Part shown: positions 31,845 to 64,000 of the stretch, piece by piece
Layout: each line of letters opens with the position of its first letter
Position numbering within the stretch: the stretch's first letter is position 1
Virus record (IMG/VR): IMGVR_UViG_3300027770_000027
Coordinates: 1-64,000 of that record
DNA length: 64,000 bases
Strand: one strand, 5' to 3'
Position numbers and translations under genes: made by a program
The notes under the pieces: generated by a model
What the model was told of the DNA's origin: nothing
Databases searched by the model: none
Seen by the model: the letters and a program-made list of their open reading frames with translations, nothing else

Positions 31845-34547
31845 ATGAATTTTAGGGAATTTTTTACAGAGGCTGGTAAGATCTTGTCCAAACAGGGTAT
31901 AGAACTATCTAGAGTAAACAAGCAAGACTTTTTAACAGCCAAAGCAAAATTAAACCCTATTCTTCAAAGGGCTGGGTTGACTGCTGGGTGGACTGCCGGT
32001 GGTGCGGGGAGTTTTGATCCAGAACACCCATATGGTGGTGGTGGCAGAGATGACTCTGGAGATATAGACATTTTAATAGATCCTGTAGAATTAATTCAAA
32101 AATTTCCTAAAGACATTGCAGAATACGTAAAAGAATTCAACGCAAGAGCCAAAACAGAAGGTAAAAAACCTATAGGTGATGTAGCTTTGAATAATGCTTT
32201 AGCAATACCTGCCAAGAAAAGTGAACTACAAATAAGTGCTAGTAAATGGGAGCTAGCAAAATATATGTCTCAAAATGGTTACGAAACTACTCCAGGAACT
32301 TTGACGTTACAATATTCTGTAAACGGAAAAAATCATTCTGTAGATTTAATTTTAAGACCCAAAAGTGCCTGGGAGTTACACACTCACGACTTTACAAAAG
32401 ATGCTGGAATGAGAGGAAGTGATCTTTGGTTAAAGATTTATCCTCTCTTGGCTAAGTTAGCTAGTAAAACAAAACTTCCACCAGATCCAAAAACTGGAGA
32501 AGAAAAGGGCAATTTACAATTTAGTCCAGAAAGGGGAGTAGTAGATAGAAATACCAATGAAGTGATAACTTCCAATAAAAATGAGATAGCAAAACTTTTA
32601 TTAGGACCAGATGCATCTGCTGTAGATTTAGCTAGTCTTTCTGGCATTAAAAATAAATTAATGAATCAACCCGAAAAATGGAATGCAATCAAAGAATTTT
32701 ATCCAATTAAAAATGAAAGCATGGACTTAGGAGTTTTAATGGAAGGCATTGACCATCCAGAGGATAATATTATTAATAACGGATATGAAGGAGCCGAACA
32801 GGCATTTAAACAAATGTCTTCTCTGGTCAAAAATAGTAAGACAGTTACCATTAAATGGGATGGTTTTCCAGCAATTATTTTTGGGTGGAAAGAAATTCCT
32901 TCTAAAAATAATCCAAACGGTCAATTTTTGTTTGTAGACAAACACATGTTTGATAAAATGGCTAAGAGTAAACTAGAGTTTACATCTATAGAAGATTATG
33001 ACAAAGGTCGCGGAGCCAATAGACAAAGCCTATGGGAAGCCGCAGCAATGATGGTCCCTACAATGAAAAAAATTGTTCCCATGACTCAAGATCAATACTT
33101 TTTCGGAGATCTTATGTGGTCTGGAATGCCTAAGATTCAAAACGGATATTATGTATTTGAACCCAACACCGTAAAGTATCAGGTCAAAATTGACTCTGAC
33201 TTGGGAAACACTATAGGCAAGAGTGTAGGTGGTATAGCCATACACACCTTTATACCATCTATGGGCGCGGAGGATAGACCGTTGAAGGGATTGCAGGGAT
33301 TAAAACAAAACAATGGAATAACTTTCTTAGTTGGGGAAATTAAAGAAAAACCAAAAATTGCTCTGTCTACAGACCAGTTATCTCAAACTCAAGAAATTCT
33401 TAACTCAAATAAACATGTTGTCAAACAATTTGTGGGTGATCTTAAAACGTTAAAATCTGCAGTTGTTTTATCCAGCATGTCGCCGTTTATTACTTCGATG
33501 TTAAGAGACAATGATATAGCATCTGATATAGTTCCTAGATTTTTAACATTTCTTAAAACTAGATTATCTGAAGGACAGTCTATAAAATTATTAGGCATTA
33601 ATAAAGACGGATGGCTTTATAAAGAAGGTGCTCGCGGTTTAATAGGAATTTGGTCTATATGGGCGGCTTTAACTGAATTAAAACTTAACATTAAAAAGCA
33701 AATAGACCTTCAACAAACCGGTCTTCCTGTACAGGCTCGGATAGGCGAAGAAGATTCTCATGAAGGATATGTTTTTGGATCCGGAGCTAATAAATTAAAA
33801 CTTATAGATCGACTAGGATTTAGTAAAGCAAATTTTGCCAAAAATAATGTTGCTGGAGAAGATGTTTCTTCAAAATTAAATATGCCCGCAGCTTCATTTT
33901 GTTTTGGTCGAATGAATCCACCAACTGTGGGTCACAAAGCTTTGATGCAAAAAACTATCGAAAAGGGTGGTACTAATTCTTTTATATTTTTAAGTAATAC
34001 TCAAAATTCAAAAAAAGACCCACTAAATCCAGATATTAAATCTCAATTTGTAAAATTAATTTATCCAGAATTTGCTCCACATGTTGTTGATGAGAAAGTA
34101 TTAAATCCGATTTATGCTGCAAATTATCTATATGCTAAAGGTTTTAGAAATTTAATTTTTATTGCTGGCTCTGATAGATTGGGTGATAATCAAGGTAGTC
34201 TTGAAAAATTATTGACTAGTTGGAACAGTGGGGCTATTAGAACCAAAGATACTAATTTTGGCCCACAAGGAAGAGAACAAGTGGCTTTAAGATTTGTTAG
34301 CAGTGGAGACAGAGATCCAGATGCTACCGAAGGAGACGTAAGTGGTATATCTGCTTCTTTAGCGAGAAAGTTAGCAACTGAAGGCAATGAACAAGGATTT
34401 TATAAAGCCACAGGAGTTTCTTCTAATCTAGTAGTTGCTGGTAAAAATCTCTATCAAGCTGTAAGAGAAGGAATGGGACTTTCAACTGTTAAACCACCCG
34501 TATCTGAAAGTATCATTAGTTTCAAAGAATTTCTCTTTAAAACTTAA
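31845..34547 (+). CDS. Three-domain nucleotidyltransferase fusion (Pol-beta-like NTase + ligase-fold/DUF6267-like + HxGH cytidylyl/adenylyltransferase)
   Basis: GS(55-56)...DID(73-75); KWDG(337), GDL(421), EGY(640), KLKLID(650); FGRMNPPTVGH(687-697), AGSDR, ISAS..R. Confidence 0.8.
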   Translation: MNFREFFTEAGKILSKQGIELSRVNKQDFLTAKAKLNPILQRAGLTAGWTAGGAGSFDPEHPYGGGGRDDSGDIDILIDPVELIQKFPKDIAEYVKEFNARAKTEGKKPIGDVALNNALAIPAKKSELQISASKWELAKYMSQNGYETTPGTLTLQYSVNGKNHSVDLILRPKSAWELHTHDFTKDAGMRGSDLWLKIYPLLAKLASKTKLPPDPKTGEEKGNLQFSPERGVVDRNTNEVITSNKNEIAKLLLGPDASAVDLASLSGIKNKLMNQPEKWNAIKEFYPIKNESMDLGVLMEGIDHPEDNIINNGYEGAEQAFKQMSSLVKNSKTVTIKWDGFPAIIFGWKEIPSKNNPNGQFLFVDKHMFDKMAKSKLEFTSIEDYDKGRGANRQSLWEAAAMMVPTMKKIVPMTQDQYFFGDLMWSGMPKIQNGYYVFEPNTVKYQVKIDSDLGNTIGKSVGGIAIHTFIPSMGAEDRPLKGLQGLKQNNGITFLVGEIKEKPKIALSTDQLSQTQEILNSNKHVVKQFVGDLKTLKSAVVLSSMSPFITSMLRDNDIASDIVPRFLTFLKTRLSEGQSIKLLGINKDGWLYKEGARGLIGIWSIWAALTELKLNIKKQIDLQQTGLPVQARIGEEDSHEGYVFGSGANKLKLIDRLGFSKANFAKNNVAGEDVSSKLNMPAASFCFGRMNPPTVGHKALMQKTIEKGGTNSFIFLSNTQNSKKDPLNPDIKSQFVKLIYPEFAPHVVDEKVLNPIYAANYLYAKGFRNLIFIAGSDRLGDNQGSLEKLLTSWNSGAIRTKDTNFGPQGREQVALRFVSSGDRDPDATEGDVSGISASLARKLATEGNEQGFYKATGVSSNLVVAGKNLYQAVREGMGLSTVKPPVSESIISFKEFLFKT

Positions 34548-39410: not shown

Positions 39411-39835
39411 TGGTGGAGGCGAGGGGAGTTGAACCCCTGTCCTGAAAACTTAGACTTTAGCGTCTACAATCATATTTTGCTAACATTATAGGGACAAAGG
39501 GTTGTTAGCTAGTTTTTAGTCTACCTGCTGGCGCGAAGTCTACCAGCTACTCTCGGCTTGTTTTTATTGAGCTTCACGATCTTACTCAAACCTACTTAGG
39601 TTACTCCAGAAATTTTAATAGGATCCATTTCTGTTTGTTAGGCTGCGAGCTCGTACATCTCTTCTTCTGCGAGGTAATCCTCGAAGTTGTTGATGATGTG
39701 GGTTGCTTCAGCTAAGAGTGCTTCTGTATTATCAGTTGCATTTATTTGTTTGTCCAGAGATTTTAACGAGGCCAACCAGACTTCCTCGGATTGCAACTAA
39801 AGTTTTCAGCGCTCAGTCGAAACCAATGCGCCCCC
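39411..39835 (-). ncRNA. ssrA: tmRNA
   Basis: 5' GGGGGCG pairs with 3' CGCCUCC-ACCA (G3.U70); GGUUUCGAC; T-arm GGGGUUCAACUCCCC; resume context AUAAAU-GCA; tag ORF 39739-39638 ending LAA*. Confidence 0.95.
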
Positions 39836-39891
39836 AAATGTTAAAGATCTATTTACAATTATATAACAATTATATAATTATTCAAGCAAAA

Positions 39892-40161: not shown

Positions 40162-41847
40162 CTATGAAATTGTATTAATGGTATGAGGCACTAAGATGCT
40201 TGCTTTTTGAACTCCTTTATTAATAATTCCTTGATTGGTTAAAATAACTTGAAGTGTTCCTGTGGTACCAAAATCAATTGCATTATGTCCTTTGACAATA
40301 CTAATGGTATTAGACAAGACTATACCACCAACTGTAACTCTTGCATATTTATCACCAGACAAAATTACATTATTTGTAGATATTTGACCATACTTGAATC
40401 TAAGAGCTCCACCAGTTGATGTAGGACCTGGATTTGTTAAAGTATCTCTATCAGACTCTGTTTGGTAAATTGTAATGGAATCTGCTCCTGTAAATATTAA
40501 TTCACTATCTAAATTATTGGATCTTATTAATATTTTATCAGAAATTAAATTATTATTTAATTGGTAAAAATCTTTGCCAATTGCAAATACTATATCATCA
40601 GTCAATACTATACTTTTTAGTATTAAAGTATCTCCCGAAATGCTAACAACATTACTTGCGGTTGCATCCAAAGCTAATCCATTTTTAAAAGATAATGTAC
40701 CAAAAGTTTCTGATTCAATATCTCCGTAATCAATGCCGTCAGATGTTGTTTGATAATAAGACAAATAATCATGTATCTTCGCGACAGAGTCTAGATTATT
40801 ATAAGCAGATGCCACGTCAACCTTGGTTTCTGTTATAAACAAATCTTTAACGTAATTGGGATTAATTGTAATAGTTGATCCGATGGCGGGATCAACTGTA
40901 AAATTTTCACTGATTGAATAGTACCCATATTTTGCTATTTTATAATTCCACAATCCAGACGCATTAGATGCTAATACAATTGAAGAAGGTTCTGTAATAA
41001 AATATTGTTTAGAGTTAGTATTATCATATATTCCAACACTGCCACTTAATGGACTTATATTAATAATTGTAGGTGCATAATTTTGAATTTCTGGATCAGT
41101 GGCATTGTTAATTGTAGAATTAACACGCTTGATTAAAACATTACCAGTTCCTATATTAACAACAGTACCAATAGTACAATTAGTATATGTAATAGATGCC
41201 GGAGAATTTGTATTGTAAATTAATGTGCCGTTAATTATTACATTTGTTAAATCATTTGGAGTTTTGTCTGTTGCACTAGCTGCTATAGTGATATTTGTAA
41301 TCCCACTATTACCAGAAACTGAAAGAGTTCCATTTGTCTTAACGGATGCTCCAGAAAGCGTATTGCAATGAAGTACAAAAGTACTTCCGTCATAACTAAA
41401 TGCTGGGGAAGCAGAATCAAATAGAATAATATTATTAGAACCTACGTCTAATGTAGATGCATAAAAATTTAAATCTCCATATCCTAATCCAGCACTAGTA
41501 GTTCTGTAATAAGATAGGTAATCATAAATCTTTTGTGTTACACTAAAATCAGAATAAGCAGAAACGGATGCGACTACATCAGATACATAAATGTCTTGGA
41601 TATATGTTGGAGCAATTGTTACGATACCTCCAGCAGCACGATCAATCGTAAATGTACCAGTAACTAACTTGTATCCGTATTTAGCAATCTTATACGTCCA
41701 CGTTCCAGTAGCTGAATAAGGCAGTTCTAAAGTACCGTCTGTATTTTGATAATACTGCTGAGTTGTCGCGTTATCATAGATAGCAATATACCCTCCTTGT
41801 AAAGTCAGGCTTATATAAGTTGGGATATATGTTAAAATATTAGACAT
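40162..41847 (-). CDS. Repeat-containing adhesin/tail-fibre-associated protein
   Basis: Two copies of IYDN...YKIAKYGY...FT.D...I.P.Y..D...KI.DYLSYY.TT..G..YGD. Confidence 0.6.
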   Translation of the reverse strand: MSNILTYIPTYISLTLQGGYIAIYDNATTQQYYQNTDGTLELPYSATGTWTYKIAKYGYKLVTGTFTIDRAAGGIVTIAPTYIQDIYVSDVVASVSAYSDFSVTQKIYDYLSYYRTTSAGLGYGDLNFYASTLDVGSNNIILFDSASPAFSYDGSTFVLHCNTLSGASVKTNGTLSVSGNSGITNITIAASATDKTPNDLTNVIINGTLIYNTNSPASITYTNCTIGTVVNIGTGNVLIKRVNSTINNATDPEIQNYAPTIINISPLSGSVGIYDNTNSKQYFITEPSSIVLASNASGLWNYKIAKYGYYSISENFTVDPAIGSTITINPNYVKDLFITETKVDVASAYNNLDSVAKIHDYLSYYQTTSDGIDYGDIESETFGTLSFKNGLALDATASNVVSISGDTLILKSIVLTDDIVFAIGKDFYQLNNNLISDKILIRSNNLDSELIFTGADSITIYQTESDRDTLTNPGPTSTGGALRFKYGQISTNNVILSGDKYARVTVGGIVLSNTISIVKGHNAIDFGTTGTLQVILTNQGIINKGVQKASILVPHTINTIS

Positions 41848-44287
41848 AGGTTACAGTAGAATTTATCTTCTTAATTGTTACGTTTGCTGATCCTTCATTG
41901 GTAGCGCTAGTTATGGTACAATTAGTGTATGTTACCAATGAAGGAGTGTTTGTATTGTAGCTTAGCAATTTAGAAATTGTTACTCCATTTAAGTTGGATA
42001 CATTTAATGAAGATACGTTTGCATTAACTGTTATATTTGACAGAATAGCGCTGCCAGATAATGTCACCAATCCACTTGTCTTTACAGTATTAAAATTATT
42101 ACCAGAAGAAAGTAAAGGAGTTTTAATTGTTATTGTATTTGAAGCACTAGCATATGCGAAATTTGTAGATGCTGAATTATTAACAACAATGTTCTTATCA
42201 CCAAAATCTAACACAGTTCCGTTCCTTGTATATAAGTCTAGATACGAAGTTGATAATGGATTATTAATTGTCCAGTAATTGGAAGCATCATAGAGACGAT
42301 CTAAATTAGTTATATCAACGGAAGATACTTGGTTTTCTGTTAATGTTGTTAATGTATCAACACTTCTATAAGCATTTTTAACTACTTCATATCCATACCA
42401 TCTTACATCTTTAATAAAGGGATCTAAATTTAAACCGTCAAGATAAACAAAACCTGTAGAAAGTGTACTTGTTCCTGTCAATCTAATTTCTATATCACCA
42501 GTATATGTTGGTGTAAGATCATATTCGAAACCATTCCAAGTATTTACAGATGATTGACAAGTAAATGTTGTAGTAGTAACTGCACCACCGAACGTAATTG
42601 AAGGTGGAGTGGTTGAACCATAAGCTGAATCAAATCTTAAATTACCTTTAATTTTTTGAGTAACACCTTGAATAGCTGGTATAGTAAATATTTTAACAAA
42701 TGCTGTATTTGGAATTTTTGGTCTAAACGAAAGTGAAGTTAAACCATTTTTTCTTATAGAAGAATTTGTTGTTGCGTGATAAAAATAATTGAATGAAGTA
42801 GATGTACTATCGTTATTCGGATTAAAGATATTAAAAGTAGCCTCATTAAGAGTTCTGTTTACAGTAGAAAATGTATACGAAGAAATTGGAACACTCATTG
42901 TGCAGTTTAACAATGTCATGTCACCAAACACATTTAGAGTATTAGTTGCTATTGTTCTAGGAGATGGATATACAAGAGTGCAGTTATTTGCTTTCCATGA
43001 GTTTAAATTGTCAAAATATAAAAGCTGACCGTTTGATCTTAATGTGCAGTTATTAAGTATATTATACGCTCCAGTAGTACCAACTGGTAGAATATTAGTT
43101 TCAGCATTTAAGTAAGAATTTTCGAATGTTATTTTATATGGTCCAGCCGATTCATATCCTATACCACATCTATATATTACAGAATTTGTAACTTTTGTTA
43201 GATTATTAGCTCCAAAATAAAATGAACCTATGGTGGAATTACTAGGAACAATGATAGCAATATCATCTGCAATAATTTCATTATAAGGTAGTCCTGTAGA
43301 AGTGAAAGCGGGGGCAGTTGAAGCGTTTAAAGAAATTGATATTCCTTTAAAAATAGGTTGTGTTATAGAACTATATGTAACAGTACAAATTAATGCTCCA
43401 ACACCAGCGAGAATATTACCAGTTGCATCTGTTCTTGTCCAATTAGTACCAAAATTTTCAAATGAAACATTATTAACTTGATAAGCTCCATTTGAACCAT
43501 CTAAAATTAATCCAGCAGCTTGAGGAGAACTTTCTAAAGATTTTAAAGTTACCGTGCTGCTAAAATTACCAACTCTCGTTCCTGCTAATCTTGCAAAGTT
43601 TAAATTAGTATCTAAAGTAATTGTATTACCAGAAACGTTTGAAATTCTTGCACTAAAAGCTCTACTTGTACTAGTAGTATCAGATTCAATCCAGATTAAA
43701 TCACCATTTGCCCAATTTTTACTAGCATTAACAACAATTTGATTTTGAGAAGCACTTGCAGGAGATGTTAAAAAGGTATTTCTTGTTTTCTCTAAACCAC
43801 AAAAACATGCAGAATTATACAGAGTTAAAGTTGATACACGGTTAACATATATTGCTGCTGAACCATCTCTATTACAAGAGAGTGAAATTGTAGAAGTAAC
43901 TGATGATAAAGGATCATTTACTGTACCCCAATCCAAAAATGAATTAGTTGTTAATACACTTGCACCGTCTACCCAAATAGTTCCTACTGCTGTTAATGCT
44001 GTATTTTGAGTCCTTGATGCTCTTAATGTACCTCCACTTAATATGATTGAGGCAGTTGAAATATTTTTAGTACCAGTGCCAAGCGTATGTCCTCCTCCTC
44101 CATCACCAAATACACCTGAAGTATTATATGTAACAGTATGGCCTTGCCTAATGACAATTTTATCTCTACCGTTAGATTGAGGAGCAACACTAGCAGTTGC
44201 TGTTGGTGTAAATGTACCAGTTGCAGCAGTTAACCATATTGATGCTGTTGTCCAATCTCCTGTTCCATTTGAAATATACGTTGCCAT
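41840..44287 (-). CDS. Beta-helix (G8/pectin-lyase-like) tailspike/adhesin with a CBM-like module
   Basis: N-terminal GDWTTASIW...IVIRQGHTVTY; Asn-ladder repeats NNCTL/LNCTM; jelly-roll-like VNTWNGFEYDLTPTYTGDIEIRL..VYLDG. Confidence 0.6.
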   Translation of the reverse strand: MATYISNGTGDWTTASIWLTAATGTFTPTATASVAPQSNGRDKIVIRQGHTVTYNTSGVFGDGGGGHTLGTGTKNISTASIILSGGTLRASRTQNTALTAVGTIWVDGASVLTTNSFLDWGTVNDPLSSVTSTISLSCNRDGSAAIYVNRVSTLTLYNSACFCGLEKTRNTFLTSPASASQNQIVVNASKNWANGDLIWIESDTTSTSRAFSARISNVSGNTITLDTNLNFARLAGTRVGNFSSTVTLKSLESSPQAAGLILDGSNGAYQVNNVSFENFGTNWTRTDATGNILAGVGALICTVTYSSITQPIFKGISISLNASTAPAFTSTGLPYNEIIADDIAIIVPSNSTIGSFYFGANNLTKVTNSVIYRCGIGYESAGPYKITFENSYLNAETNILPVGTTGAYNILNNCTLRSNGQLLYFDNLNSWKANNCTLVYPSPRTIATNTLNVFGDMTLLNCTMSVPISSYTFSTVNRTLNEATFNIFNPNNDSTSTSFNYFYHATTNSSIRKNGLTSLSFRPKIPNTAFVKIFTIPAIQGVTQKIKGNLRFDSAYGSTTPPSITFGGAVTTTTFTCQSSVNTWNGFEYDLTPTYTGDIEIRLTGTSTLSTGFVYLDGLNLDPFIKDVRWYGYEVVKNAYRSVDTLTTLTENQVSSVDITNLDRLYDASNYWTINNPLSTSYLDLYTRNGTVLDFGDKNIVVNNSASTNFAYASASNTITIKTPLLSSGNNFNTVKTSGLVTLSGSAILSNITVNANVSSLNVSNLNGVTISKLLSYNTNTPSLVTYTNCTITSATNEGSANVTIKKINSTVTYV

Positions 44288-44303
44288 GTTATAGTTGTAT
44301 TTA

Positions 44304-45746
44304 TTATAATGTAATCGATTTACTAGCTACTAATCCAGAAACTGCTGTGCCGTTCCATGTAGTGTAGAAAGCATCTGTGCTGCCATTAGTTGATATAAAT
44401 CTGTAATATGTTTTGTTTGTTGGAGAGGAGTTGTAAACATAACTGTATACTTCTCCAGTTCCTATAGTTGCCAATAAAGTAGGAGCAATGTTATATCCTC
44501 TAACTAAAGTCATCCAATCAACTACTGTTTTATTTGTTAAAGTCTGAGTTCCGCTTAGAGTGACATAGGTACTAGAAACCGCTTGATATGTGGTGGCTGT
44601 GTTATGAGCAATATTCCAATTACTTGATAAATTATTTGTAGTAGAATAAACAGAGGCCCATTTGGGAGTATCAACTGTAGAAAATGTTCCAGTTACAGTT
44701 AAATTTCCGTTAACCGTTCCCCCAGATTTATCAAATTTAGCACTTAAATCTGTTGTTAAATTTAATATCTTAGATTGATTAATTTGAGCATTTGAAGCTA
44801 CATCTACATCAACCAACAAAGATGCTGGTGTTTGATATATACCGTTAATTACTTTTACTAGCCCAGACCCACCCACAGATGGTAAAGTTGTATGAAAATG
44901 TGTTGGTGTATTACCTCCAAACCCAAAAGTTACATGATGGTTATTAGAGCTTGCTTTTGCTCTAAACTCAACGTATATACGATCTGATGTTAGTATAGGT
45001 GTTTGAGTGAGTAAACATGAAATAACTATAGGGTAAAAAACACCCCCGTTTGTTAATTTTGTACTCTCTGAAGTTGATAATAAAGTTGGAGCATTAACCC
45101 CGTCGTATTTGTATATCAATGCTTGTACTAATAGTGTTTCATTTTGGTTAGCATCACTATACCCCCATAGATTAAAATCCCATAGACCTGCTGGAATAGC
45201 AGTAATGTTAGGGTCTAATACATCTGATACAAATCCCGCAACTAGATCATAATTAACCTGTGAAAGTGTAGGACTAGTGACAATAGTCTGAGCTGATAGC
45301 CCTGTTCGTCCTAGTTCATGAGCAGTTAATGGTAAATTGGTAGTTGGCGATTGAGCAGATAGTCCTTGATTTAAGAAGTATGTTAATCCACCTCCTCCAC
45401 TACCCCCTACGGCAATTGATCCGGGAACCCAAGCTGTTCCATTCCATTGTAAAATCTGTCCATTAACAGGAGTTGCTGTACTAATCGTATAGCCTTGCAA
45501 TTTAGAAACTGTAGGATTTGGATAAGATCCAGAAAGATCTCCTCCTGCAGAACCCGTAGTGGTGTCTGCCCCTGCCCATTGAGCGGAAGAAGCAAGAACC
45601 GTAGAATATGTAGCATTCCACAGAGTAGAATTGCCCCCATTGGCATAAACAACATTCTGAGCAGAAGCAGATCCTATAAGAGACAAGGATCCACTGCCAT
45701 ATGTGTTGCCGTATACAACTAAATCATCTACTACATTTATAGACAT
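44304..45746 (-). CDS. Tail fibre-like protein
   Basis: AGGDLSGSYPNPTV, GQILQWNGTAWVP, KFDKSGGTVNGNLTV fibre motifs. Confidence 0.65.
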   Translation of the reverse strand: MSINVVDDLVVYGNTYGSGSLSLIGSASAQNVVYANGGNSTLWNATYSTVLASSAQWAGADTTTGSAGGDLSGSYPNPTVSKLQGYTISTATPVNGQILQWNGTAWVPGSIAVGGSGGGGLTYFLNQGLSAQSPTTNLPLTAHELGRTGLSAQTIVTSPTLSQVNYDLVAGFVSDVLDPNITAIPAGLWDFNLWGYSDANQNETLLVQALIYKYDGVNAPTLLSTSESTKLTNGGVFYPIVISCLLTQTPILTSDRIYVEFRAKASSNNHHVTFGFGGNTPTHFHTTLPSVGGSGLVKVINGIYQTPASLLVDVDVASNAQINQSKILNLTTDLSAKFDKSGGTVNGNLTVTGTFSTVDTPKWASVYSTTNNLSSNWNIAHNTATTYQAVSSTYVTLSGTQTLTNKTVVDWMTLVRGYNIAPTLLATIGTGEVYSYVYNSSPTNKTYYRFISTNGSTDAFYTTWNGTAVSGLVASKSITL

Positions 45747-45774
45747 ACATATCTATTTATCTTTATAAACAACA

Positions 45775-47040
45775 TTACCCTATGATAACGGCCTTATAGG
45801 CATTAGTTGTTGGTATAAAGCTAAAAGATACGACTGTAATGTATGGATCTTTGTTTGCAATGGTGGGAATTACAGTTTGACCACTAGAGTTATCATATAT
45901 ATTAACTACTCTATCAATAGAACTAATAGTGTGAGAAATAGAGAATATTCTATTTATTCCGTCTCCTATAAGAGCTACTTGCTTACTGCTTATGTTAAGA
46001 GCAGTTACCAAGGCGTATGTAGTATTCCAGCGAGCAGATAAGCTATTAACAGTTGCTTCGACCGATGCAATCTTGGGTTGATATACAGCTGAGGATAACA
46101 CCCCATCCAGATGAGATCCGTCCCCGTAATGAGTACCAGATAAACTAGCCGCATTTACATACTGGCTAAAGACTCCATAAGAAGCAGAAACTGAATTAGA
46201 TATAGAAACATCTGACGTGGTAATTTGTTTATCAAAATATACATTGTCGGTAGCACTAACAGTGCCTATCACTGTTAGGGTCTTATTAGGAGCGGATGTA
46301 TTGATGCCAATAACTCCAGCTGGTATTGTTCCGTTAGTAAATTTGGCGTTTCCTACATGCAACGCTTCTATACCATCAGCATCATAGAAACTTGCAATGT
46401 TTCCAGGACCAAGTCCTTGTTGAACATACAAGGCAGGACCGTCCCCTAGATTGATAACACTTAAAGAACTGGTATTAGTGAAGACTGTGGTGTTATTAAA
46501 GGTGGTGGTTCCGGTTGCGGTTAAGTTTCCTACAACAGTAACATTGCCAACAATAATATCTGTATGAAGAGCATATGTTGATAGATTGTTATAAACCGTG
46601 GCATTGTCTACAAATAAATTTTTTGCAGATATTTGATTAGTGGCAATAACACCACCAGCTTTAAGAGATAATACATCTAATTCTGCACCTCTTAATAATG
46701 CTGCAAGGTCACTAGCAGATCCTAAAGGAGATCCGTTTAGTACAATTGAAGACGCACTCAGTCCATCAAAAATTGCATTTTTACCAGACAGTAGTCCTGT
46801 AAGAGTTCCTCCAGTTAATGAAAGCTTGGAAGGATCTATACCAGTAACATTAGTAACAAATGTACCGTCCCCATAAAAATAATTGAAATGGGCATTATCT
46901 CCCGACAATCCAGCAAACCCCGTAAGTTGGCCCCCAGAAAGAGGTAGAACATTAGTTAGTCCACTGCCGTCTCCGTATATAATAGAATTGGAGGATACAG
47001 ACCCAGAAACTGTAAGAGCATCTAAAAATTGAACAGCCAT
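45775..47040 (-). CDS. Tail fibre-like protein
   Basis: LPLSGGQLTG, LSLTGGTLTG, IGINTSAPNKTLTVIG fibre repeats. Confidence 0.65.
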   Translation of the reverse strand: MAVQFLDALTVSGSVSSNSIIYGDGSGLTNVLPLSGGQLTGFAGLSGDNAHFNYFYGDGTFVTNVTGIDPSKLSLTGGTLTGLLSGKNAIFDGLSASSIVLNGSPLGSASDLAALLRGAELDVLSLKAGGVIATNQISAKNLFVDNATVYNNLSTYALHTDIIVGNVTVVGNLTATGTTTFNNTTVFTNTSSLSVINLGDGPALYVQQGLGPGNIASFYDADGIEALHVGNAKFTNGTIPAGVIGINTSAPNKTLTVIGTVSATDNVYFDKQITTSDVSISNSVSASYGVFSQYVNAASLSGTHYGDGSHLDGVLSSAVYQPKIASVEATVNSLSARWNTTYALVTALNISSKQVALIGDGINRIFSISHTISSIDRVVNIYDNSSGQTVIPTIANKDPYITVVSFSFIPTTNAYKAVIIG

Positions 47041-50836: not shown

Positions 50837-50913
50837 TGGTGCAATCGGCGGGATTCGAACCCGCGACCAACAGATTAGAAATCTGTTGCTCTATCCAGCT
50901 GAGCTACGATTGC
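50837..50913 (-). tRNA. tRNA-Arg(UCU)
   Basis: GCAATCG...ACAGA-TT-TCT-AA-TCTGT...GGTTCGAATCCC...CGATTGC-ACCA. Confidence 0.95.
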
Positions 50914-50923
50914 TTGTTAAAAA

Positions 50924-50998
50924 TGGAGCGGGTAGAGGGAATTGAACCCTCCTATCTAGTTTGGAAGACTAGGGCATTAGCCACTATGCTATACCCGC
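50924..50998 (-). tRNA. tRNA-Gly(UCC)
   Basis: GCGGGTA...CTAGT-CT-TCC-AA-ACTAG...GGGTTCAATTCCC...TACCCGC-TCCA. Confidence 0.95.
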
Positions 50999-50999
50999 A

Positions 51000-51073
51000 T
51001 GGCACGTCCTGAGGGAATCGAACTCTCATCAACGGTTTTGGAGACCGCAGTTTTACCATTAAACTAAAGACGC
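51000..51073 (-). tRNA. tRNA-Trp(CCA)
   Basis: GCGTCTT...GCGGT-CT-CCA-AA-ACCGT...GAGTTCGATTCCC...AGGACGT-GCCA. Confidence 0.93.
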
Positions 51074-59765: not shown

Positions 59766-60557
59766 TCAAACTTTAAAAAGCTTCTTTAATTTATACTCAG
59801 CTCTACTAGTTGGTATATTACTTAGATCATCTAATTCTTTTCTAGTGAATGGTGCTGCAGGGGTTGGGATTCCGTCATAGGTTCGAGCAATGTCCGGTAA
59901 GATTTCCTCTTCACAAAATAGACTGCCGGACATATGCCAAACATTCAAAGTCAGGGTCACTGCTTTAATCTTATCTTCCAGACTCTCAGCTCCAAACAAC
60001 AAACGAAAACAATAATCTATTCCCTTATAAGCCTCCGCGGCGATATTGGATAAGTTCACCCGCTCCAGGTCCTCTTCGGCATGTAACAAAAAACGCGGGG
60101 ACTTGGGATTATTAATATAGTCGCCCGTCAAATAATCTATCTTTTGGGAATCCTCAGGCCAGTCCAGTTGAGGCTGCGTGTGCCTCATTAAGCGGCCGGC
60201 AGGCATAGGGGTCACTCCCCTACAATCGAACTCACTTAAAAGAGCCCTTCTCGTTCGTCTTCCGACATGCGCATCCATTATAGTAATAAGATATAATTTA
60301 ATCCATTCATAATGGTTTCTTATTTCTCTATCCACCTGTTGCTTCACTTGGTCCTGTTCGTCTCCATAGTGATAATCGGATAAGAGATATTTCATCATTA
60401 CATATTCATGAAATATATGGAGTCTCTTTAATGCCGTCCCCTTAAACTCTTTTACGATCTTCTGGATAACGGGATAATAACCGCGGTACAAGGGGGACAG
60501 CCGGATAGTGACAAGCAGCTTCTTCCTAAAGGCCATTACATCTGTTGTGGAACTCAT
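59766..60557 (-). CDS. Hypothetical protein
   Basis: 263-aa ORF; LNVWHMSG motif not assigned. Confidence 0.55.
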   Translation of the reverse strand: MSSTTDVMAFRKKLLVTIRLSPLYRGYYPVIQKIVKEFKGTALKRLHIFHEYVMMKYLLSDYHYGDEQDQVKQQVDREIRNHYEWIKLYLITIMDAHVGRRTRRALLSEFDCRGVTPMPAGRLMRHTQPQLDWPEDSQKIDYLTGDYINNPKSPRFLLHAEEDLERVNLSNIAAEAYKGIDYCFRLLFGAESLEDKIKAVTLTLNVWHMSGSLFCEEEILPDIARTYDGIPTPAAPFTRKELDDLSNIPTSRAEYKLKKLFKV

Positions 60558-60762
60558 CTAATACATACCGCGCCAGGTACAGGGGTCTATAGGGTATATA
60601 GGGGGTACTCTTATATAGTAGAACAGCGGATTGCCCCCACCCCCCGGCTCCGGCGTGATACCCCTATTACCTGTTTTTGAACAGCCGGGGTCCTTGCATA
60701 CCACGGTGCGAAAAATCCCCAGAGGTCCCTCTCCGCCCCTGGGGCTTGACTCGCCGCCTATG

Positions 60763-61149
60763 CTACTCGAGGCCGTTCTCCAGGAGGCTGTCGATGAAGC
60801 CGTACTCACATCCTAGGTCGAAGTCGAGGAACCGATTGTCACCAAGGGTCTCCTGGGCCTCGTGGAGCCACCGGATTGCCATCGCAACGTCCTGGGCCCC
60901 ATACTGCATGAGGACTCGGATCTGCTCCCGAGCTGCCTGCTCAGCCCTAGCGGTGCGTTGCTTCTCCTCTTCTACCTGGACATAGTACTCCCGCTCGAGC
61001 CGAGCCAGCATTCCCTTCAGCTCCTGCACCGTGACCTTGGTACCGTAGATCCACCGAGCCTTCACCCCGTAGACGTCCTTGTGGAAGTCACAGTACTCAT
61101 CCATCAGCTGCTCGAGTTCGGTGCGGGCGATCGTCATGTCATTCATCAT
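60763..61149 (-). CDS. Early-type hypothetical protein
   Basis: DFHKDVYGVKAR; own promoter; ATGATG start. Confidence 0.65.
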   Translation of the reverse strand: MMNDMTIARTELEQLMDEYCDFHKDVYGVKARWIYGTKVTVQELKGMLARLEREYYVQVEEEKQRTARAEQAAREQIRVLMQYGAQDVAMAIRWLHEAQETLGDNRFLDFDLGCEYGFIDSLLENGLE

Positions 61150-61187
61150 GTTTATATATTAGAGGAGAGAGTGGGGAACCTCAAGGA

Positions 61188-61412
61188 CTATCGGACCGTT
61201 GCGAGGTCCCAATCGTCGAGTCGGACCACATCCTTATTGGCTAGCTCGACGTCCACTGTGACCCGGTTCACCTTCACCACGGTGCCTGTGTGGCGGATGT
61301 TCTCGGTCTGCCGGCCGTCGAAGAACGTGGTCGTCCAGTTGATCGTCTGGCCGATGGTGAACTGATCCTTGAGGGTGGTCTTGGCGGTGTGCTTCTTAAT
61401 TACTTTCATCAT
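61188..61412 (-). CDS. Small SH3-like early protein, paralogue 1
   Basis: FFDGR...TGTVVKVNRVTVDV. Confidence 0.65.
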   Translation of the reverse strand: MMKVIKKHTAKTTLKDQFTIGQTINWTTTFFDGRQTENIRHTGTVVKVNRVTVDVELANKDVVRLDDWDLATVR

Positions 61413-61450
61413 GTATATATCTTAAGGGTTTATTGGGGGAACTGCAACAC

Positions 61451-61687
61451 TTACCAAGGCCGAGTATTAACCTTCACCTGACGGAGGTCTAGGCGGACTA
61501 CATCCTGGTTCGGCAGGTACACGTCCACGGTGACCTTGTTCATCTTGCACACGGTGCCGGTGTAAGGGACATACTCACCGGTCCGGCCGTCGAAGAAACG
61601 AATTACCCAGTCGACTACCTGTCCGGTGCGGAACTTGGGAAGCTGTTCGGTGTGGCGCTTGATTGTTCTCATTGCTGTTCTCATCAT
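61451..61687 (-). CDS. Small SH3-like early protein, paralogue 2
   Basis: FFDGR...TGTVCKMNKVTVDV. Confidence 0.65.
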   Translation of the reverse strand: MMRTAMRTIKRHTEQLPKFRTGQVVDWVIRFFDGRTGEYVPYTGTVCKMNKVTVDVYLPNQDVVRLDLRQVKVNTRPW

Positions 61688-61725
61688 GTATATATCTTAA
61701 GGGTTTCTGGAGGGAACTGCAAGCA

Positions 61726-62022
61726 CTACCGGTTGATCGTTGTGGTCCTATTCTGCAGGAGGAGGTCGAGCTCCTTCAGCTGCTTGAGGGTCGTGAGGTT
61801 CTCCTTCTGTACCAGCGCCAGGCCTTCCACGAAGTCGGTGTTCAGCCAGTCAGTCTTGAAGGCGAGTCCGTTCACCCCGAAGCCTAGGTGTGTGGTTCCT
61901 TCTTCCTCATCGGTGAGGATACCGAGGACGCGGAAGTCGATGGCCTTCGGGTTCTTGGCTTCGAGCGCCTGGAGGACTGCTACGCGGACTTCGGTCTTGG
62001 TGTTCATCTTGTTTTTCATCAT
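61726..62022 (-). CDS. Early hypothetical protein
   Basis: Own promoter; ATGATG start. Confidence 0.6.
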   Translation of the reverse strand: MMKNKMNTKTEVRVAVLQALEAKNPKAIDFRVLGILTDEEEGTTHLGFGVNGLAFKTDWLNTDFVEGLALVQKENLTTLKQLKELDLLLQNRTTTINR

Positions 62023-62060
62023 GTAATAATATTAACGGACGTTGGGGGGAACTGCAAGGA

Positions 62061-62333
62061 CTACTTCCGAGCTCTGGCCTTCTTGAACTGAGCCCTCACC
62101 TTTGCAAAGGTCTCGTCCTGCTCGGGCTCCGGGTAGAACCAGTTCCAGGTGTTGCGGACTCCCTTGACCAGGAGCTCGAGGAGGCACAGAGGGATGAGGA
62201 TCGGGGAGAGCACCACGGTGAGCAGAGCGGTGACAACGATCGTGGTGATACAGGCGCTCGCTAGTGCGTTGATCGTGGACTGGTGGCGGAGGCGGAAAGC
62301 GAAGGCTTCGGTGGGTGTCATGGTGTCTTTCAT
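62061..62333 (-). CDS. Early membrane protein
   Basis: Long hydrophobic segment; own promoter. Confidence 0.6.
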   Translation of the reverse strand: MKDTMTPTEAFAFRLRHQSTINALASACITTIVVTALLTVVLSPILIPLCLLELLVKGVRNTWNWFYPEPEQDETFAKVRAQFKKARARK

Positions 62334-62375
62334 CTTGTATATATCTTAGGTGAGGAGAGGGGGAACCGCACGGAC

Positions 62376-62468
62376 TTAGTTGAGGTCGAAGAGGTAGATA
62401 AAGGTCGCGCCGAGGCCTACGAGAAGGACGAAGTGAACTGTCACGGCTACTACTTGGAACGTTGTCAT
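62376..62468 (-). CDS. 30-aa single-TM peptide (below ORF-track cutoff)
   Basis: MTTFQVVAVTVHFVLLVGLGATFIYLFDLN; own promoter. Confidence 0.6.
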   Translation of the reverse strand: MTTFQVVAVTVHFVLLVGLGATFIYLFDLN

Positions 62469-62500
62469 TGTTAAGATATTAAAGGATGTACTGGGGAACC

Positions 62501-62695
62501 TCAAGCGAAGACTTCGTGGGCGATCCCGGACTCTGGCTGCTCGTAGGACTCGATGAAGAACCTCTTAGAGTCCTTCCGTTGCCAGATCCACTCCTCCGCG
62601 GACTTCCGATCGAAGAAGACTCCGATGAACTCATTGCCGCCGTTGGAGAAGGCTCCGGCTTCCTTGAACACGATATGGACTTGGGTCTTGGTCAT
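62501..62695 (-). CDS. Early hypothetical protein
   Basis: VHIVF...FIGVFFDRKSAEEW; own promoter. Confidence 0.6.
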   Translation of the reverse strand: MTKTQVHIVFKEAGAFSNGGNEFIGVFFDRKSAEEWIWQRKDSKRFFIESYEQPESGIAHEVFA

Positions 62696-62733
62696 AGTTC
62701 TATTATGGGTTAGGAACTGGGGAAGCTCAACGC

Positions 62734-62898
62734 TTATCGTCCGAGAGCAGGCAGGGGCTTCTGAACAGTCACCCAGTGGAGGATCTCGGTCGGGACTCGG
62801 AACACCTTAGCTGCCTGCTCTGCGTCCTCGCGCTTGGCGTAAGCTCCGAGGAAAGCCTGATTGTCTTCGCGAACGAGAATGTAAACGGTGTCTTTCAT
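62734..62898 (-). CDS. Early hypothetical protein
   Basis: Start MKDTVYILVRED; promoter occupies the ORF-track 5' extension; FLGAYAKREDAEQ. Confidence 0.6.
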   Translation of the reverse strand: MKDTVYILVREDNQAFLGAYAKREDAEQAAKVFRVPTEILHWVTVQKPLPALGR

Positions 62899-62930
62899 TG
62901 TTAATATCTTAGTGGATCTAACGGGGAAGC

Positions 62931-63128
62931 TCAAGCCTCAAGAGCGAGGACGTTGAACGGGACCTGGACTACCTGATTGCTGGGAAGTTCCACGCAGACA
63001 TCCAGCTCGGTGTTCTTCTCCAGGCGAGCGGCCACGGACATGGCCTGCCAGAGAGTCTCGTGGGATGTGTGGATCCGGTAGGGCTTGTTGGGGTAGAGAG
63101 GGGAGCGAGTGAGGACGTTGTAGGTCAT
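62931..63128 (-). CDS. Early hypothetical protein
   Basis: 65-aa ORF co-oriented in the array. Confidence 0.55.
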   Translation of the reverse strand: MTYNVLTRSPLYPNKPYRIHTSHETLWQAMSVAARLEKNTELDVCVELPSNQVVQVPFNVLALEA

Positions 63129-63140
63129 GGTGATTGGGAA

Positions 63141-63242
63141 TTAGAGGTTATGCTTAGCTGCTACGTAGGTCACGAAGACTGCGGCGACTCCGGTGAGAGC
63201 GACTCCGGTGAACATCAGGATGGGAAGGACTGTTTCAATCAT
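63141..63242 (-). CDS. 33-aa single-TM peptide (below ORF-track cutoff)
   Basis: MIETVLPILMFTGVALTGVAAVFVTYVAAKHNL; own promoter. Confidence 0.6.
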   Translation of the reverse strand: MIETVLPILMFTGVALTGVAAVFVTYVAAKHNL

Positions 63243-63281
63243 GTAATAATCTTAGCACATGACTGGGGGAACCTCCCGCCC

Positions 63282-63530
63282 TCAATAGTGCCGTGTCTTT
63301 GACTCTGTCTTGACTCGCTCATACTCTGCTCGCGTCCTCTCGTCTTCCAAAGAGAGGAGTAGCCGGTGGAGTTGGCCTGCAGCAACCTGATAGGCCTTCT
63401 CGGCGGTGTAGGCTTCCCGGCGAAGGGCATTGACGGCATCCAGCTTATCTGTCTTGTGAGCAGAGAGACTGTCCAGGAGGTCGAGTTGTTGGCGGACGCC
63501 GGGGTTATTGAGGATGTCTTGGTTATTCAT
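63282..63530 (-). CDS. Early coiled-coil protein
   Basis: 82-aa helical ORF. Confidence 0.55.
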   Translation of the reverse strand: MNNQDILNNPGVRQQLDLLDSLSAHKTDKLDAVNALRREAYTAEKAYQVAAGQLHRLLLSLEDERTRAEYERVKTESKTRHY

Positions 63531-63554
63531 AGATTTATTGGTTGTGGGGAAAGA

Positions 63555-63731
63555 TTAGTGGCGGTTCCGGGGATTGATTCCCTTCCCGGCGTTCTCCTGC
63601 CGGTGGATGATGACCCCGGCGATCACGAAGAGGACAATCACAGGCCAGAAGTTCACGGCGAGCTTGAGGAAGACCTGGCCAATGAGGGAAAGCTTGTCTG
63701 TGAGGGTCATGTCGAAGTGTTCTTGAATCAT
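63555..63731 (-). CDS. 58-aa membrane peptide (below ORF-track cutoff)
   Basis: MIQEHFDMTLTDKLSLIGQVFLKLAVNFWPVIVLFVIAGVIIHRQ...; CATAAT 6 nt upstream. Confidence 0.6.
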   Translation of the reverse strand: MIQEHFDMTLTDKLSLIGQVFLKLAVNFWPVIVLFVIAGVIIHRQENAGKGINPRNRH

Positions 63732-63788
63732 GTTTCTATTATGGCTGGGAATGCTGGGAAGGGAACGGCTGACTTTAACATTGAGGTC

Positions 63789-63971
63789 CTACTTGCACAG
63801 GCAGTAGACTCCGAAGAGGGCCAGCCCTCCCACGATGAGGCCGTGGTTCCCCAGGAACGCGAGACATAGGGTTCCCAGGGCGGTTCCGGCCATCGCCATT
63901 CCTAGGAAGGCGGACGGGCATAGGAACCAGAGGGCTGCGAGAACGGCGAGGAACATCATTACTTTCATCAT
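63789..63971 (-). CDS. 60-aa hydrophobic membrane protein
   Basis: Almost entirely hydrophobic; own promoter; ATGATG start. Confidence 0.6.
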   Translation of the reverse strand: MMKVMMFLAVLAALWFLCPSAFLGMAMAGTALGTLCLAFLGNHGLIVGGLALFGVYCLCK

Positions 63972-64000
63972 GTATATATCTTACAGGACTTGAGGGGGAA

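What the first reader, a model, noticed from the sequence alone, without database searches (positions are those of the whole stretch)
39411..39835. Phage tmRNA with a 33-residue acidic tag
Seen: a 425-nt tmRNA whose reading frame from the resume GCA (39739) encodes ATDNTEALLAEATHIINNFEDYLAEEEMYELAA*. Known: typical tags are about 10 residues (E. coli ANDENYALAA); C-terminal LAA is the ClpX signal; longer tags occur in some lineages such as Chlamydiae. No smpB is in this window. Inference: the tag either mirrors an unusual host tag (host marker) or adds a helical acidic module that changes adaptor/protease routing of rescued proteins.
Basis: partly seen in the sequence, partly recalled or inferred. 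Interest (0 to 1): 0.6.

Follow-up and report, generated by a model that had tools for sequence, protein, structure and literature searches.

The report
Phage tmRNA with long acidic tag
A 227-kb freshwater phage carries its own, expressed ribosome-rescue RNA (tmRNA) whose tag is three times the usual length, acidic and helical, and the whole tag is conserved at the protein level across a clade of lake phages, so the extra length has been kept by selection.

Summary
ARAGORN and Rfam (132.6 bits) both call a 425-nt one-piece tmRNA at 39411-39835 (-). The resume codon GCA is at 39739 and the tag has 33 codons ending in LAA. The window is part of a complete 227-kb T4-like myophage genome from lake water, and that genome has no smpB, clpP, clpX-like or sspB gene. 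The proposed refutation, a resume codon further downstream, fails. In more than 20 related phage tmRNAs the whole 30-33-codon frame stays open, length changes come in threes, and substitutions pile up at third codon positions (pS 0.5-0.9 against pN 0.1-0.3), including in relatives found through a non-coding part of the RNA. A lake metatranscriptome holds an identical 325-nt piece at about 55 times the depth of the flanking genes or more. The "mirrors the host tag" reading is not supported, though the host is unknown. The "added helical acidic module" reading fits the sequence evidence, but its effect on proteolysis is untested. Long acidic phage tags have a precedent in Bxz1-type mycobacteriophages (25-26 aa against a 12-aa host tag), with no demonstrable homology to this family. 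Verdict: a real, expressed member of a phage-borne tmRNA clade I found no description of, and a new variant of a known kind.

The parts
39411..39835 (-). whole tmRNA (ssrA) gene, 425 nt, one-piece
   Evidence: ARAGORN. Rfam RF00023 at 132.6 bits over the full model.
39809..39835 (-). 5' half of the tRNA-like domain: acceptor 5' strand with G3 of the G3-U pair, and the GGUUUCGAC D-loop analogue
   Evidence: ARAGORN domain call. The acceptor pairs 4-6 show compensatory GC/CG/UA changes and G3-U is invariant in 10 relatives.
39752..39789 (-). pseudoknot PK1. Stem 1 pairs CGAGG with CCUCG; stem 2 pairs GUCUGG with CUGGAC.
   Evidence: Read from the sequence. Stem 1 is invariant in all relatives. 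Stem 2 wobble pairs become Watson-Crick pairs in L020 and in L021/L022. This 23-nt core retrieved distant relatives.
39740..39751 (-). single-stranded A-rich leader ending AUAAAU just before the resume codon
   Evidence: It aligns with the Rfam consensus before the resume codon. Its length varies from 11 to 13 nt among relatives while the frame always starts at GCN.
39641..39739 (-). tag reading frame of 33 codons, from the resume GCA at 39739 to the C-terminal L-A-A
   Evidence: ARAGORN. Codon-level purifying selection over the whole frame. Predicted helices at residues 5-17 and 19-32.
39638..39640 (-). stop codon UAA of the tag frame
   Evidence: A stop is kept at the same place in all relatives.
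39450..39637 (-). pseudoknot-rich region (PK2-PK4 of the Rfam model) and the 3' strand of helix 2
   Evidence: Rfam alignment at lower posterior probability. A conserved stem CAGAAAU/AUUUCUG lies just after the stop, and helix 2 covaries.
39411..39449 (-). 3' half of the tRNA-like domain: T arm, acceptor 3' strand with U of G3-U, discriminator A, encoded CCA
   Evidence: ARAGORN. Rfam alignment with posterior near 1.
39858..39885 (-). sigma-70-like promoter candidate, TTGAAT-16 nt-TATAAT, whose -10 box ends 22 nt before the mature 5' end
   Evidence: Consensus scan, 10 of 12 matches. A pattern match only; not shown to be used.

Best explanation
This is a functional, phage-encoded, one-piece tmRNA. 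It is probably transcribed from its own promoter and it accumulates as an abundant stable RNA during infection. Being tRNA-Ala-like (G3-U pair, encoded CCA), it would be charged by the host alanyl-tRNA synthetase. The phage has no smpB, so it must enter stalled ribosomes with the host's SmpB and EF-Tu. Translation then resumes at GCA (39739) and adds 33 encoded residues (34 with the charged alanine) to the stalled polypeptide. The last residues (Y-E-L-A-A) form a canonical ClpX-type C-terminal degron. The 20-odd residues before it form a strongly acidic, helix-prone, amphipathic segment with a core conserved across a clade of lake phages (E-A-x-x-hydrophobic-hydrophobic-N-x-F in the nearest kin). 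Shown here: the RNA family, the frame, protein-level selection on the whole tag, presence as an abundant RNA, and the absence of phage rescue or protease genes. Inferred: use of host SmpB and AlaRS, degradation through the LAA end, and that the acidic helix is a selected binding or handling determinant (an adaptor or protease contact, or a solubilising spacer) rather than filler. Which of these it is remains open. The likely benefit to the phage is extra ribosome-rescue capacity while host mRNA decays, with control over the fate of the tagged fragments.
For: RNA identity. Covariation in the acceptor stem and helix 2, with G3-U invariant. PK1 wobble-to-Watson-Crick changes.

Resume codon: it aligns with the Rfam consensus. 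The -6 to -4 AUA matches the E. coli upstream motif (established knowledge, recalled from memory). The leader length varies by 1-2 nt while the frame always begins at GCN.

The tag is translated over its full length. Variable sites by codon position are 8/7/23. Thr13 uses all four ACN codons. Window against L020, codons 1-23: pS 0.63, pN 0.04. Tags of 33 and 32 residues differ by exactly 3 nt. Relatives found through the non-coding PK1 core show pS 0.54-0.87 against pN 0.13-0.27.

Expression: in lake metatranscriptome X2, a 325-nt contig identical to 39450-39774 has word depth 638, against 2-12 for the flanking genes in the same run. Wildcat phage tmRNA is that phage's most highly expressed lytic gene (PMC7474061).

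Dependence on the host: no SmpB, ClpP, SspB or ClpX-type AAA_2 domain in the 227-kb genome.

Tag properties: 9 acidic and 0 basic residues. AF2 helices at 5-17 and 19-32, mean pLDDT 79. Hydrophobic moment 0.44, reached by 0.9% of shuffles, with hydrophobic doublets every 7 residues.
Against: No experiment shows charging, tagging or degradation. The host is unknown, so compatibility with its SmpB and its proteases is assumed. Contig depths are a rough measure of RNA level, DNA carry-over cannot be fully excluded, and conserved k-mers shared with relatives inflate the depth (caveats). Amphipathicity is significant only for the window's tag, borderline in its near kin, and absent in the distant kin. 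The AF2 model of a 33-mer is weak evidence, and its second helix has low confidence. No conserved neighbouring gene points to a partner. Codons 1-10 of the first set of relatives were found with a back-translated pattern, which biases that part towards synonymous change. The PK1-based set was gathered to correct for this.
Confidence: 0.75

Rival explanations
1. The long tag copies the tag of the (unknown) host, so it is a host marker and not a phage invention.
For: Phage tmRNAs are generally thought to derive from host genes (PMC9004378). The N-terminal A-(T/N)-D-N and the C-terminal Y-x-L-A-A resemble common bacterial tags (sample). The host is unknown.
Against: A scan of one genome for each of 185,579 bacterial and archaeal species for the N-terminal ten residues found only a chance hit inside a protein gene. 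Related phages carry very different long tags. The Bxz1-type phage tag has 25 aa and the M. smegmatis tag 12. Abundant lake RNAs that share the PK1 core and leader with this gene run on into short 10-11-residue tags (table 7, read by hand).
Confidence: 0.08
2. Translation really resumes at the in-frame GCA 23 codons downstream, giving an ordinary 10-residue tag. The upstream part would then be conserved as RNA.
For: The last ten codons alone read like a normal tag (A-E-E-E-M-Y-E-L-A-A).
Against: Codons 1-23 show the signature of a translated frame: window against L020 has 9 synonymous and 2 non-synonymous changes, and differences sit mainly at third positions in all pairs. The upstream motif and the PK1 distance fit the first GCA. 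In distant kin no alanine codon sits at the corresponding place, yet the long frame stays open.
Confidence: 0.03
3. The extra residues are a passive spacer or solubility tail: only length and negative charge matter, there is no specific partner, and the LAA end does all the work.
For: Distant kin keep length (30-33), acidity and lack of K/R while the exact sequence and the amphipathic pattern drift. No partner gene is conserved next to the tmRNA. No phage adaptor or protease was found.
Against: Within the clade, specific positions are held: E11 and A12 are invariant, N4 and F22 nearly so, and the core is shared. pN is well below pS, which is more constraint than composition alone would need.
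Confidence: 0.15
4. The RNA acts mainly as a decoy that titrates host SmpB and blocks host trans-translation, as proposed for the TLD-only molecule of phage DS6A.
For: High RNA abundance. The precedent is discussed in PMC4131195.
Against: A decoy needs no reading frame. Here the complete mRNA-like domain, PK1-4 and a frame under protein-level selection are all kept.
Confidence: 0.04

Closest known systems
Canonical bacterial one-piece tmRNA (SsrA, Rfam RF00023), e.g. E. coli
   Same: tRNA-Ala-like domain with G3-U and CCA, PK1 followed by an A-rich leader and a GCA resume codon, an internal frame with no start codon, a tag ending L-A-A, further pseudoknots, and full-length Rfam coverage.
   Different: The tag has 33 codons against 10 in E. 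coli. The published range is 8-35 (PMC6133939). The RNA is 425 nt against a 374-position Rfam model. It is encoded by a virus that has no smpB.
tmRNA of Bxz1-type (cluster C) mycobacteriophages
   Same: Phage-borne one-piece tmRNA in a large myophage, next to tRNA genes and without smpB. The tag is long (25-26 aa), strongly acidic, has no K/R, starts A-(T/N)-D, and is much longer than the host's 12-aa tag.
   Different: Its tag ends in A-L-V or V-L-V, not L-A-A. No alignable similarity beyond the first four residues by BLASTP or hhalign, and no blastn match between the RNAs. Host phylum and habitat differ or are unknown.
Mycoplasma long ssrA tag (27 aa), read by Lon
   Same: A tag far longer than usual, in which the extra length carries recognition information for a protease (PMC8403727).
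   Different: The Mycoplasma tag is hydrophobic and aromatic, not acidic, and does not end in LAA (recalled from memory). It belongs to cells that lack ClpXP. Here the C-terminus is a standard ClpX-type degron and the proteases of the host are unknown.
Other phage tmRNAs (Melnitz and pelagiphage two-piece forms, huge-phage tmRNAs, Streptomyces phage tmRNAs)
   Same: Virus-encoded ssrA is known in about 2% of cultured phages and in huge phages (PMC9004378, PMC7162821, PMC4131195).
   Different: The marine ones are two-piece. The two Streptomyces phages listed have 9- and 13-residue tags. In a sample of 53 viral-contig tmRNAs the median tag is about 12 residues. Only 2 of the 53 reach 30, and one of those two looks like a member of this family.

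Membership tests
tmRNA (Rfam RF00023) | Covariance-model score above the curated gathering score over the full model | tested here: met
   132.6 bits against 47, model positions 1-374, E 1.2e-51. ARAGORN agrees.
tmRNA (Rfam RF00023) | tRNA-Ala-like domain: 7-bp acceptor stem with a G3-U pair, T arm, discriminator A and CCA | tested here: met
   Read from the sequence. G3-U is invariant and pairs 4-6 are compensated in 10 relatives.
tmRNA (Rfam RF00023) | Pseudoknot PK1 a fixed short distance upstream of the resume codon | tested here: met
   Both stems are present. Stem 2 wobble pairs are replaced by Watson-Crick pairs in L020 and in L021/L022. The leader is 11-13 nt.
tmRNA (Rfam RF00023) | Internal frame with no start codon that begins at an alanine codon, ends with hydrophobic residues and a stop, and is constrained as a translated frame | tested here: met
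   The frame is GCA to L-A-A-UAA. Third-position excess 8/7/23, pS well above pN, indels of 3 nt.
tmRNA (Rfam RF00023) | Present as a stable RNA | tested here: met
   An identical 325-nt contig has depth 638 against 2-12 for the flanks in a lake metatranscriptome. Contig data only: the ends and strand of the RNA were not seen.
tmRNA (Rfam RF00023) | Works with SmpB: alanylation, entry into stalled ribosomes and tagging | not testable with these tools
   No smpB in the phage genome. Host SmpB must be assumed.
ClpX-type ssrA degron | C-terminal L-A-A with a free carboxylate | tested here: met
   The tag ends Y-E-L-A-A. Relatives end in (A/D/E/L/V)-L-A-A or E-M-A-A. That ClpX reads this end is established E. 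coli knowledge, not tested here.
ClpX-type ssrA degron | Degradation of tagged proteins by ClpXP, enhanced by SspB | not testable with these tools
   Host unknown. The phage encodes no ClpP, ClpX-like or SspB protein.
Bxz1-type mycobacteriophage long acidic tag | Sequence homology of the tag or of the RNA to the cluster C tmRNAs | tested here: not met
   BLASTP finds no alignment. hhalign aligns only the first 4 residues. blastn of either RNA does not find the other. The likeness is in composition and length only.
Mycoplasma-type Lon-directed long tag | Hydrophobic, aromatic-rich long tag without an LAA end, in a cell lacking ClpXP | tested here: not met
   The tag is acidic (9 D/E) and ends in LAA. 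The protease set of the host is unknown.

The most novel reading that the evidence does not exclude
The acidic amphipathic helix is a phage-specific address label. It marks polypeptides rescued by the phage's own tmRNA as different from host-tagged ones and hands them to a particular partner: a host adaptor or protease other than the default, or an unrecognised phage protein with a matching basic helix. On this reading large phages of unrelated hosts (lake T4-like phages, cluster C mycobacteriophages) have arrived independently at long, acidic, K/R-free tags for this purpose.
Probability: 0.2. Interest if true: 0.75.

Novelty: new variant of a known kind. Interest (0 to 1): 0.5.

Why it matters
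Why some phages carry their own tmRNA is an open question, and little has been written on what their tags encode. Here a whole clade of lake phages keeps a tag three times the usual length under protein-level selection, and the RNA is abundant in nature. This suggests the phage cares about more than freeing ribosomes: what is written on the rescued fragments also matters to it. That gives a directly testable handle. Reporters carrying the full tag can be compared with reporters carrying only its last ten residues, in protease and adaptor mutants, and the tag can be used as bait for partners. The parallel with Bxz1-type phages, which can be grown in the laboratory, offers an experimental system for the general question.

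Tried and rejected
- blastn of the tmRNA, and tblastn of a neighbouring protein and of the tag, against 50,697 cultured phage records gave no match.
- The search for related loci with the 455-aa neighbour found no relatives.
- The genome-contig scan for the tag's N-terminal pattern gave only a chance hit inside an Anaerolineae ORF. Five of the 18 metagenome hits were also chance hits in protein genes.
- Host clues: no WhiB. 'Relatives' cannot be drawn for a virus record. Terminase and sheath place the phage only as a distant T4-like myovirus, 31-37% identical to phages of Sinorhizobium, Pseudomonas, Caulobacter and cyanobacteria. The host was not identified.
- No phage SmpB, ClpP, SspB or ClpX-like gene.
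- No gene is conserved next to the tmRNA across the wider family, so there is no candidate partner from synteny.
- Homology between the Bxz1/Phabba tags and this family is not supported.
- The ESM Atlas look-alike search of the tag gave no usable hit.
- Paper searches for the short tags seen in the metatranscriptome loose ends found nothing.
- One viral scan was wasted on a pattern with one N too few and was corrected.
- No complex prediction was run, because I do not claim a specific binding pair.

Full report
**1. Is it there?**

Yes. Rfam's tmRNA model matches end to end at 132.6 bits, E 1.2e-51. The sequence shows the following:
- a 7-bp acceptor stem with G3-U, discriminator A and an encoded CCA;
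- the GGUUUCGAC element;
- a T arm;
- pseudoknot PK1 (stem 1 CGAGG/CCUCG, stem 2 GUCUGG/CUGGAC);
- a 12-nt A-rich leader ending AUAAAU;
- GCA at 39739 and UAA at 39640-39638.

The window is the first 64 kb of a 227,352-bp IMG/VR virus record that CheckV rates complete. The record has a T4-type large terminase, tail sheath, baseplate spike and class I ribonucleotide reductase, and 14 tRNA genes. Its terminase and sheath are only 31-41% identical to those of cultured T4-like phages. So this is a large, novel, T4-like myophage. Every sequencing run that holds the stretch is freshwater or lake water.

**2. Relatives**

Nothing similar is in the cultured-phage collection. Scans of IMG/VR and JGI metagenomes with back-translated pieces of the tag found more than a dozen related tmRNA genes on phage contigs, among them the window's own contig. 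They carry seven full-length variants of the tag, 32 or 33 residues long, plus a truncated eighth.

That search fixes the first ten residues by design. I therefore repeated it with the invariant, non-coding 23-nt PK1 core. This brought in more distant tmRNAs (Rfam 117-150 bits) whose tags differ in sequence but are again 30-33 residues, acidic, and free of K and R. Aligned, the tags share the following:
- an A-(N/T/E)-(D/E/T)-N start;
- a central core around invariant E-A, followed two residues later by two aliphatic residues and then an aromatic one;
- an acidic stretch;
- a hydrophobic-A-A end.

RNAalifold on ten of these genes finds compensatory changes in 24 of 49 predicted pairs. G3-U is invariant, and the acceptor and helix 2 pairs are swapped GC/CG/UA. 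In PK1 stem 2, the two wobble pairs become Watson-Crick pairs in L020 and in L021/L022.

**3. Where does translation resume?**

An in-frame GCA 23 codons in would indeed give a normal-looking 10-mer. The comparative data exclude it.
- Across the near relatives, variable sites by codon position number 8, 7 and 23. Thirteen variable codons change only synonymously. Thr13 appears as ACA, ACC, ACG and ACT. Window against L020 over codons 1-23 gives pS 0.63 and pN 0.04.
- Tags of 33 and 32 residues differ by exactly three bases.
- Among the PK1-ascertained genes, differences again sit at third positions (for example 4/4/18 and 7/6/20), with pS 0.54-0.87 and pN 0.13-0.27.
- The leader between PK1 and GCN varies from 11 to 13 nt, so the frame cannot extend upstream, while the AUAAA(U/C) or CUAAAC motif directly before GCN is kept.

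The tag is therefore translated from the first GCA, and its whole length is under purifying selection as protein.

**4. Is it expressed?**

One lake metatranscriptome (X2) contains contigs identical to the phage over the whole 3-kb stretch laid. The flanking genes have word depths of 2-12. The 325-nt contig that covers 39450-39774 (tag frame and pseudoknots, no mismatch) has depth 638 (tables 2 and 8). Two other lake metatranscriptomes hold variants of the same region, that is, relatives.

These are contigs, so ends, strand and true level are not seen, and k-mers shared with relatives inflate the figure. Even so, a 50-fold or greater excess over the flanks in the same library is what an abundant stable RNA would give. 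A promoter-like TTGAAT-16-TATAAT lies with its -10 box 22 nt before the mature 5' end. For comparison, the tmRNA of mycobacteriophage Wildcat is that phage's most highly expressed lytic gene (PMC7474061).

**5. What the phage does not have**

The whole genome has no match to SmpB, ClpP, SspB or the ClpX/ClpA-type AAA_2 domain. The RNA must therefore work with the host's SmpB, alanyl-tRNA synthetase, EF-Tu and proteases (inference). No gene stays next to the tmRNA across the wider family, so synteny offers no partner.

**6. The tag as a peptide**

The tag has nine acidic and no basic residues. AlphaFold2 on the ten-tag alignment predicts helices at 5-17 (pLDDT about 89) and 19-32 (about 60). 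The helical hydrophobic moment is 0.44, reached by 0.9% of shuffles, with hydrophobic doublets at 8-9, 15-16, 22-23 and 28-29, a heptad rhythm. This amphipathic pattern is weaker in the near kin and absent in the distant ones, so acidity, length and the E-A core are the shared features.

The end Y-E-L-A-A is a standard ClpX-type degron (established knowledge for E. coli). Counting the alanine carried by the RNA, 34 residues are added.

**7. Host mirror or phage invention?**

The points against a host mirror are these.
- A scan of one genome for each of 185,579 prokaryote species for the first ten residues of the tag found only a chance match in a protein gene.
- Cluster C mycobacteriophages give a cultured parallel. 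ARAGORN finds 25-26-residue, acidic, K/R-free tags in Bxz1, Nappy and Phabba, and these tags are annotated in GenBank. Their host M. smegmatis has a 12-residue tag (PMC6133939).
- In the lake metatranscriptomes, very abundant RNAs match the phage gene only over 39741-39789 (PK1 core and leader) and then run on into short tags of 10-11 residues ending E-D-L-A-L-A-A (table 7; reverse-complemented and translated by hand). They may be tmRNAs of the host lineage.

Together these make a host mirror unlikely, but the host is unknown and this is not proof.

**8. How unusual?**

The published range of tag lengths is 8-35 residues (PMC6133939), so 33 is near the top. A sample of 53 tmRNAs from viral contigs, drawn with a T-arm pattern, has a median tag of about 12 residues. 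Only two reach 30. One of those two (L063, 31 aa) and a 29-residue one (L075) look like this family. That sample also includes host ssrA genes at prophage ends.

The two Streptomyces phages listed have 9- and 13-residue tags. Phage tmRNAs as such are well known (PMC4131195, PMC7162821, PMC9004378). I found no paper that treats tag length or composition in phage tmRNAs. The Bxz1-type tags resemble this family in length, charge and the A-(T/N)-D start, but BLASTP and hhalign align nothing beyond the first four residues. Common descent is not shown.

**9. Mechanism and rivals**

Best reading: this is a working phage tmRNA that adds rescue capacity during infection and writes a long acidic helical label ending in a ClpX-type degron. 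The label's middle part is a selected determinant of how the tagged fragments are handled. The Mycoplasma case, a 27-residue tag read by Lon (PMC8403727), shows that extra tag length can carry protease specificity.

The rivals (host mirror, downstream resume codon, passive spacer, SmpB decoy) are weighed in their own sections. The passive-spacer idea is the only one with real weight.

**10. Verdict**

This is a new variant of a known kind: an ordinary tmRNA scaffold carrying an unusually long, conserved, acidic tag, in a clade of lake phages for which I found no published description. Interest is moderate. The finding is solid and gives a testable handle on why phages carry tmRNA, but the function of the extension is still inference.

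Noticed in passing
L009:5931-6143 (-); L015:488-700 (+) and L013:3970-4041 (+): Three related phage tmRNA genes are split in the T loop. L009 holds a group I intron (Rfam 91 bits). L013 and L015 hold a different ~200-nt insert after UUCAACU, which follows the rule of U before and G at the end of a group I intron but scores only 18.9 bits. ARAGORN misses all three genes. The window's gene is uninterrupted.
   Followed up: partly
L037:1136-1400 (+); L033:4833-4931 (-): Directly after the tmRNA of L037 lies a tRNA with a CAT anticodon, split in its anticodon loop by a group I intron (Rfam 68.7 bits). L033 has a 99-nt tRNA hit at the matching place.
   Followed up: partly
window 39741-39789 (table 7): In three lake metatranscriptomes, very abundant RNAs (contig depths up to about 1100) match the phage tmRNA only over the PK1 core and leader. 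They then continue into short tags of 10-11 residues ending E-D-L-A-L-A-A, or into tags starting A-N-D-N-S-F-A. They may be tmRNAs of the host lineage or of other phages. The organism was not identified.
   Followed up: partly
window 60500-64000, continuing to about 66000 of the genome: A 5-6 kb island of 50-55% G+C in a genome averaging 36% (sd 5%). It is packed with small minus-strand genes of 54-128 aa, two of which are paralogues (61188-61412 and 61451-61687). It looks like a module acquired from a higher-GC source.
   Followed up: no
window 50837-51073 (-) and genome 93821-96506 (-): There are fourteen tRNA genes in two clusters. The one called tRNA-Ile(tat) at 93926-94016 is 91 nt long, unusually long for that type. 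It may hold an insert or be miscalled.
   Followed up: no
window 40162-47040 (-): A row of large genes (561, 815, 480 and 421 aa) with no Pfam family lies upstream of the tmRNA. The 561-aa and 815-aa proteins match several places in relatives L021 and L028, which suggests repeated or paralogous, fast-changing proteins, perhaps tail fibres.
   Followed up: no
window 31845-34547 (+): A 900-aa protein that joins DUF6267 (121 bits) to a C-terminal cytidyltransferase-like region (PHROG 3041 and 395).
   Followed up: no
L033:4952-5389, L035:3296-3732, L037:693-1129: ARAGORN does not call these uninterrupted tmRNAs, although Rfam scores them at 117-118 bits and they have clear 30-codon tag frames. 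Surveys of phage tmRNAs that use ARAGORN alone will undercount this family.
   Followed up: yes
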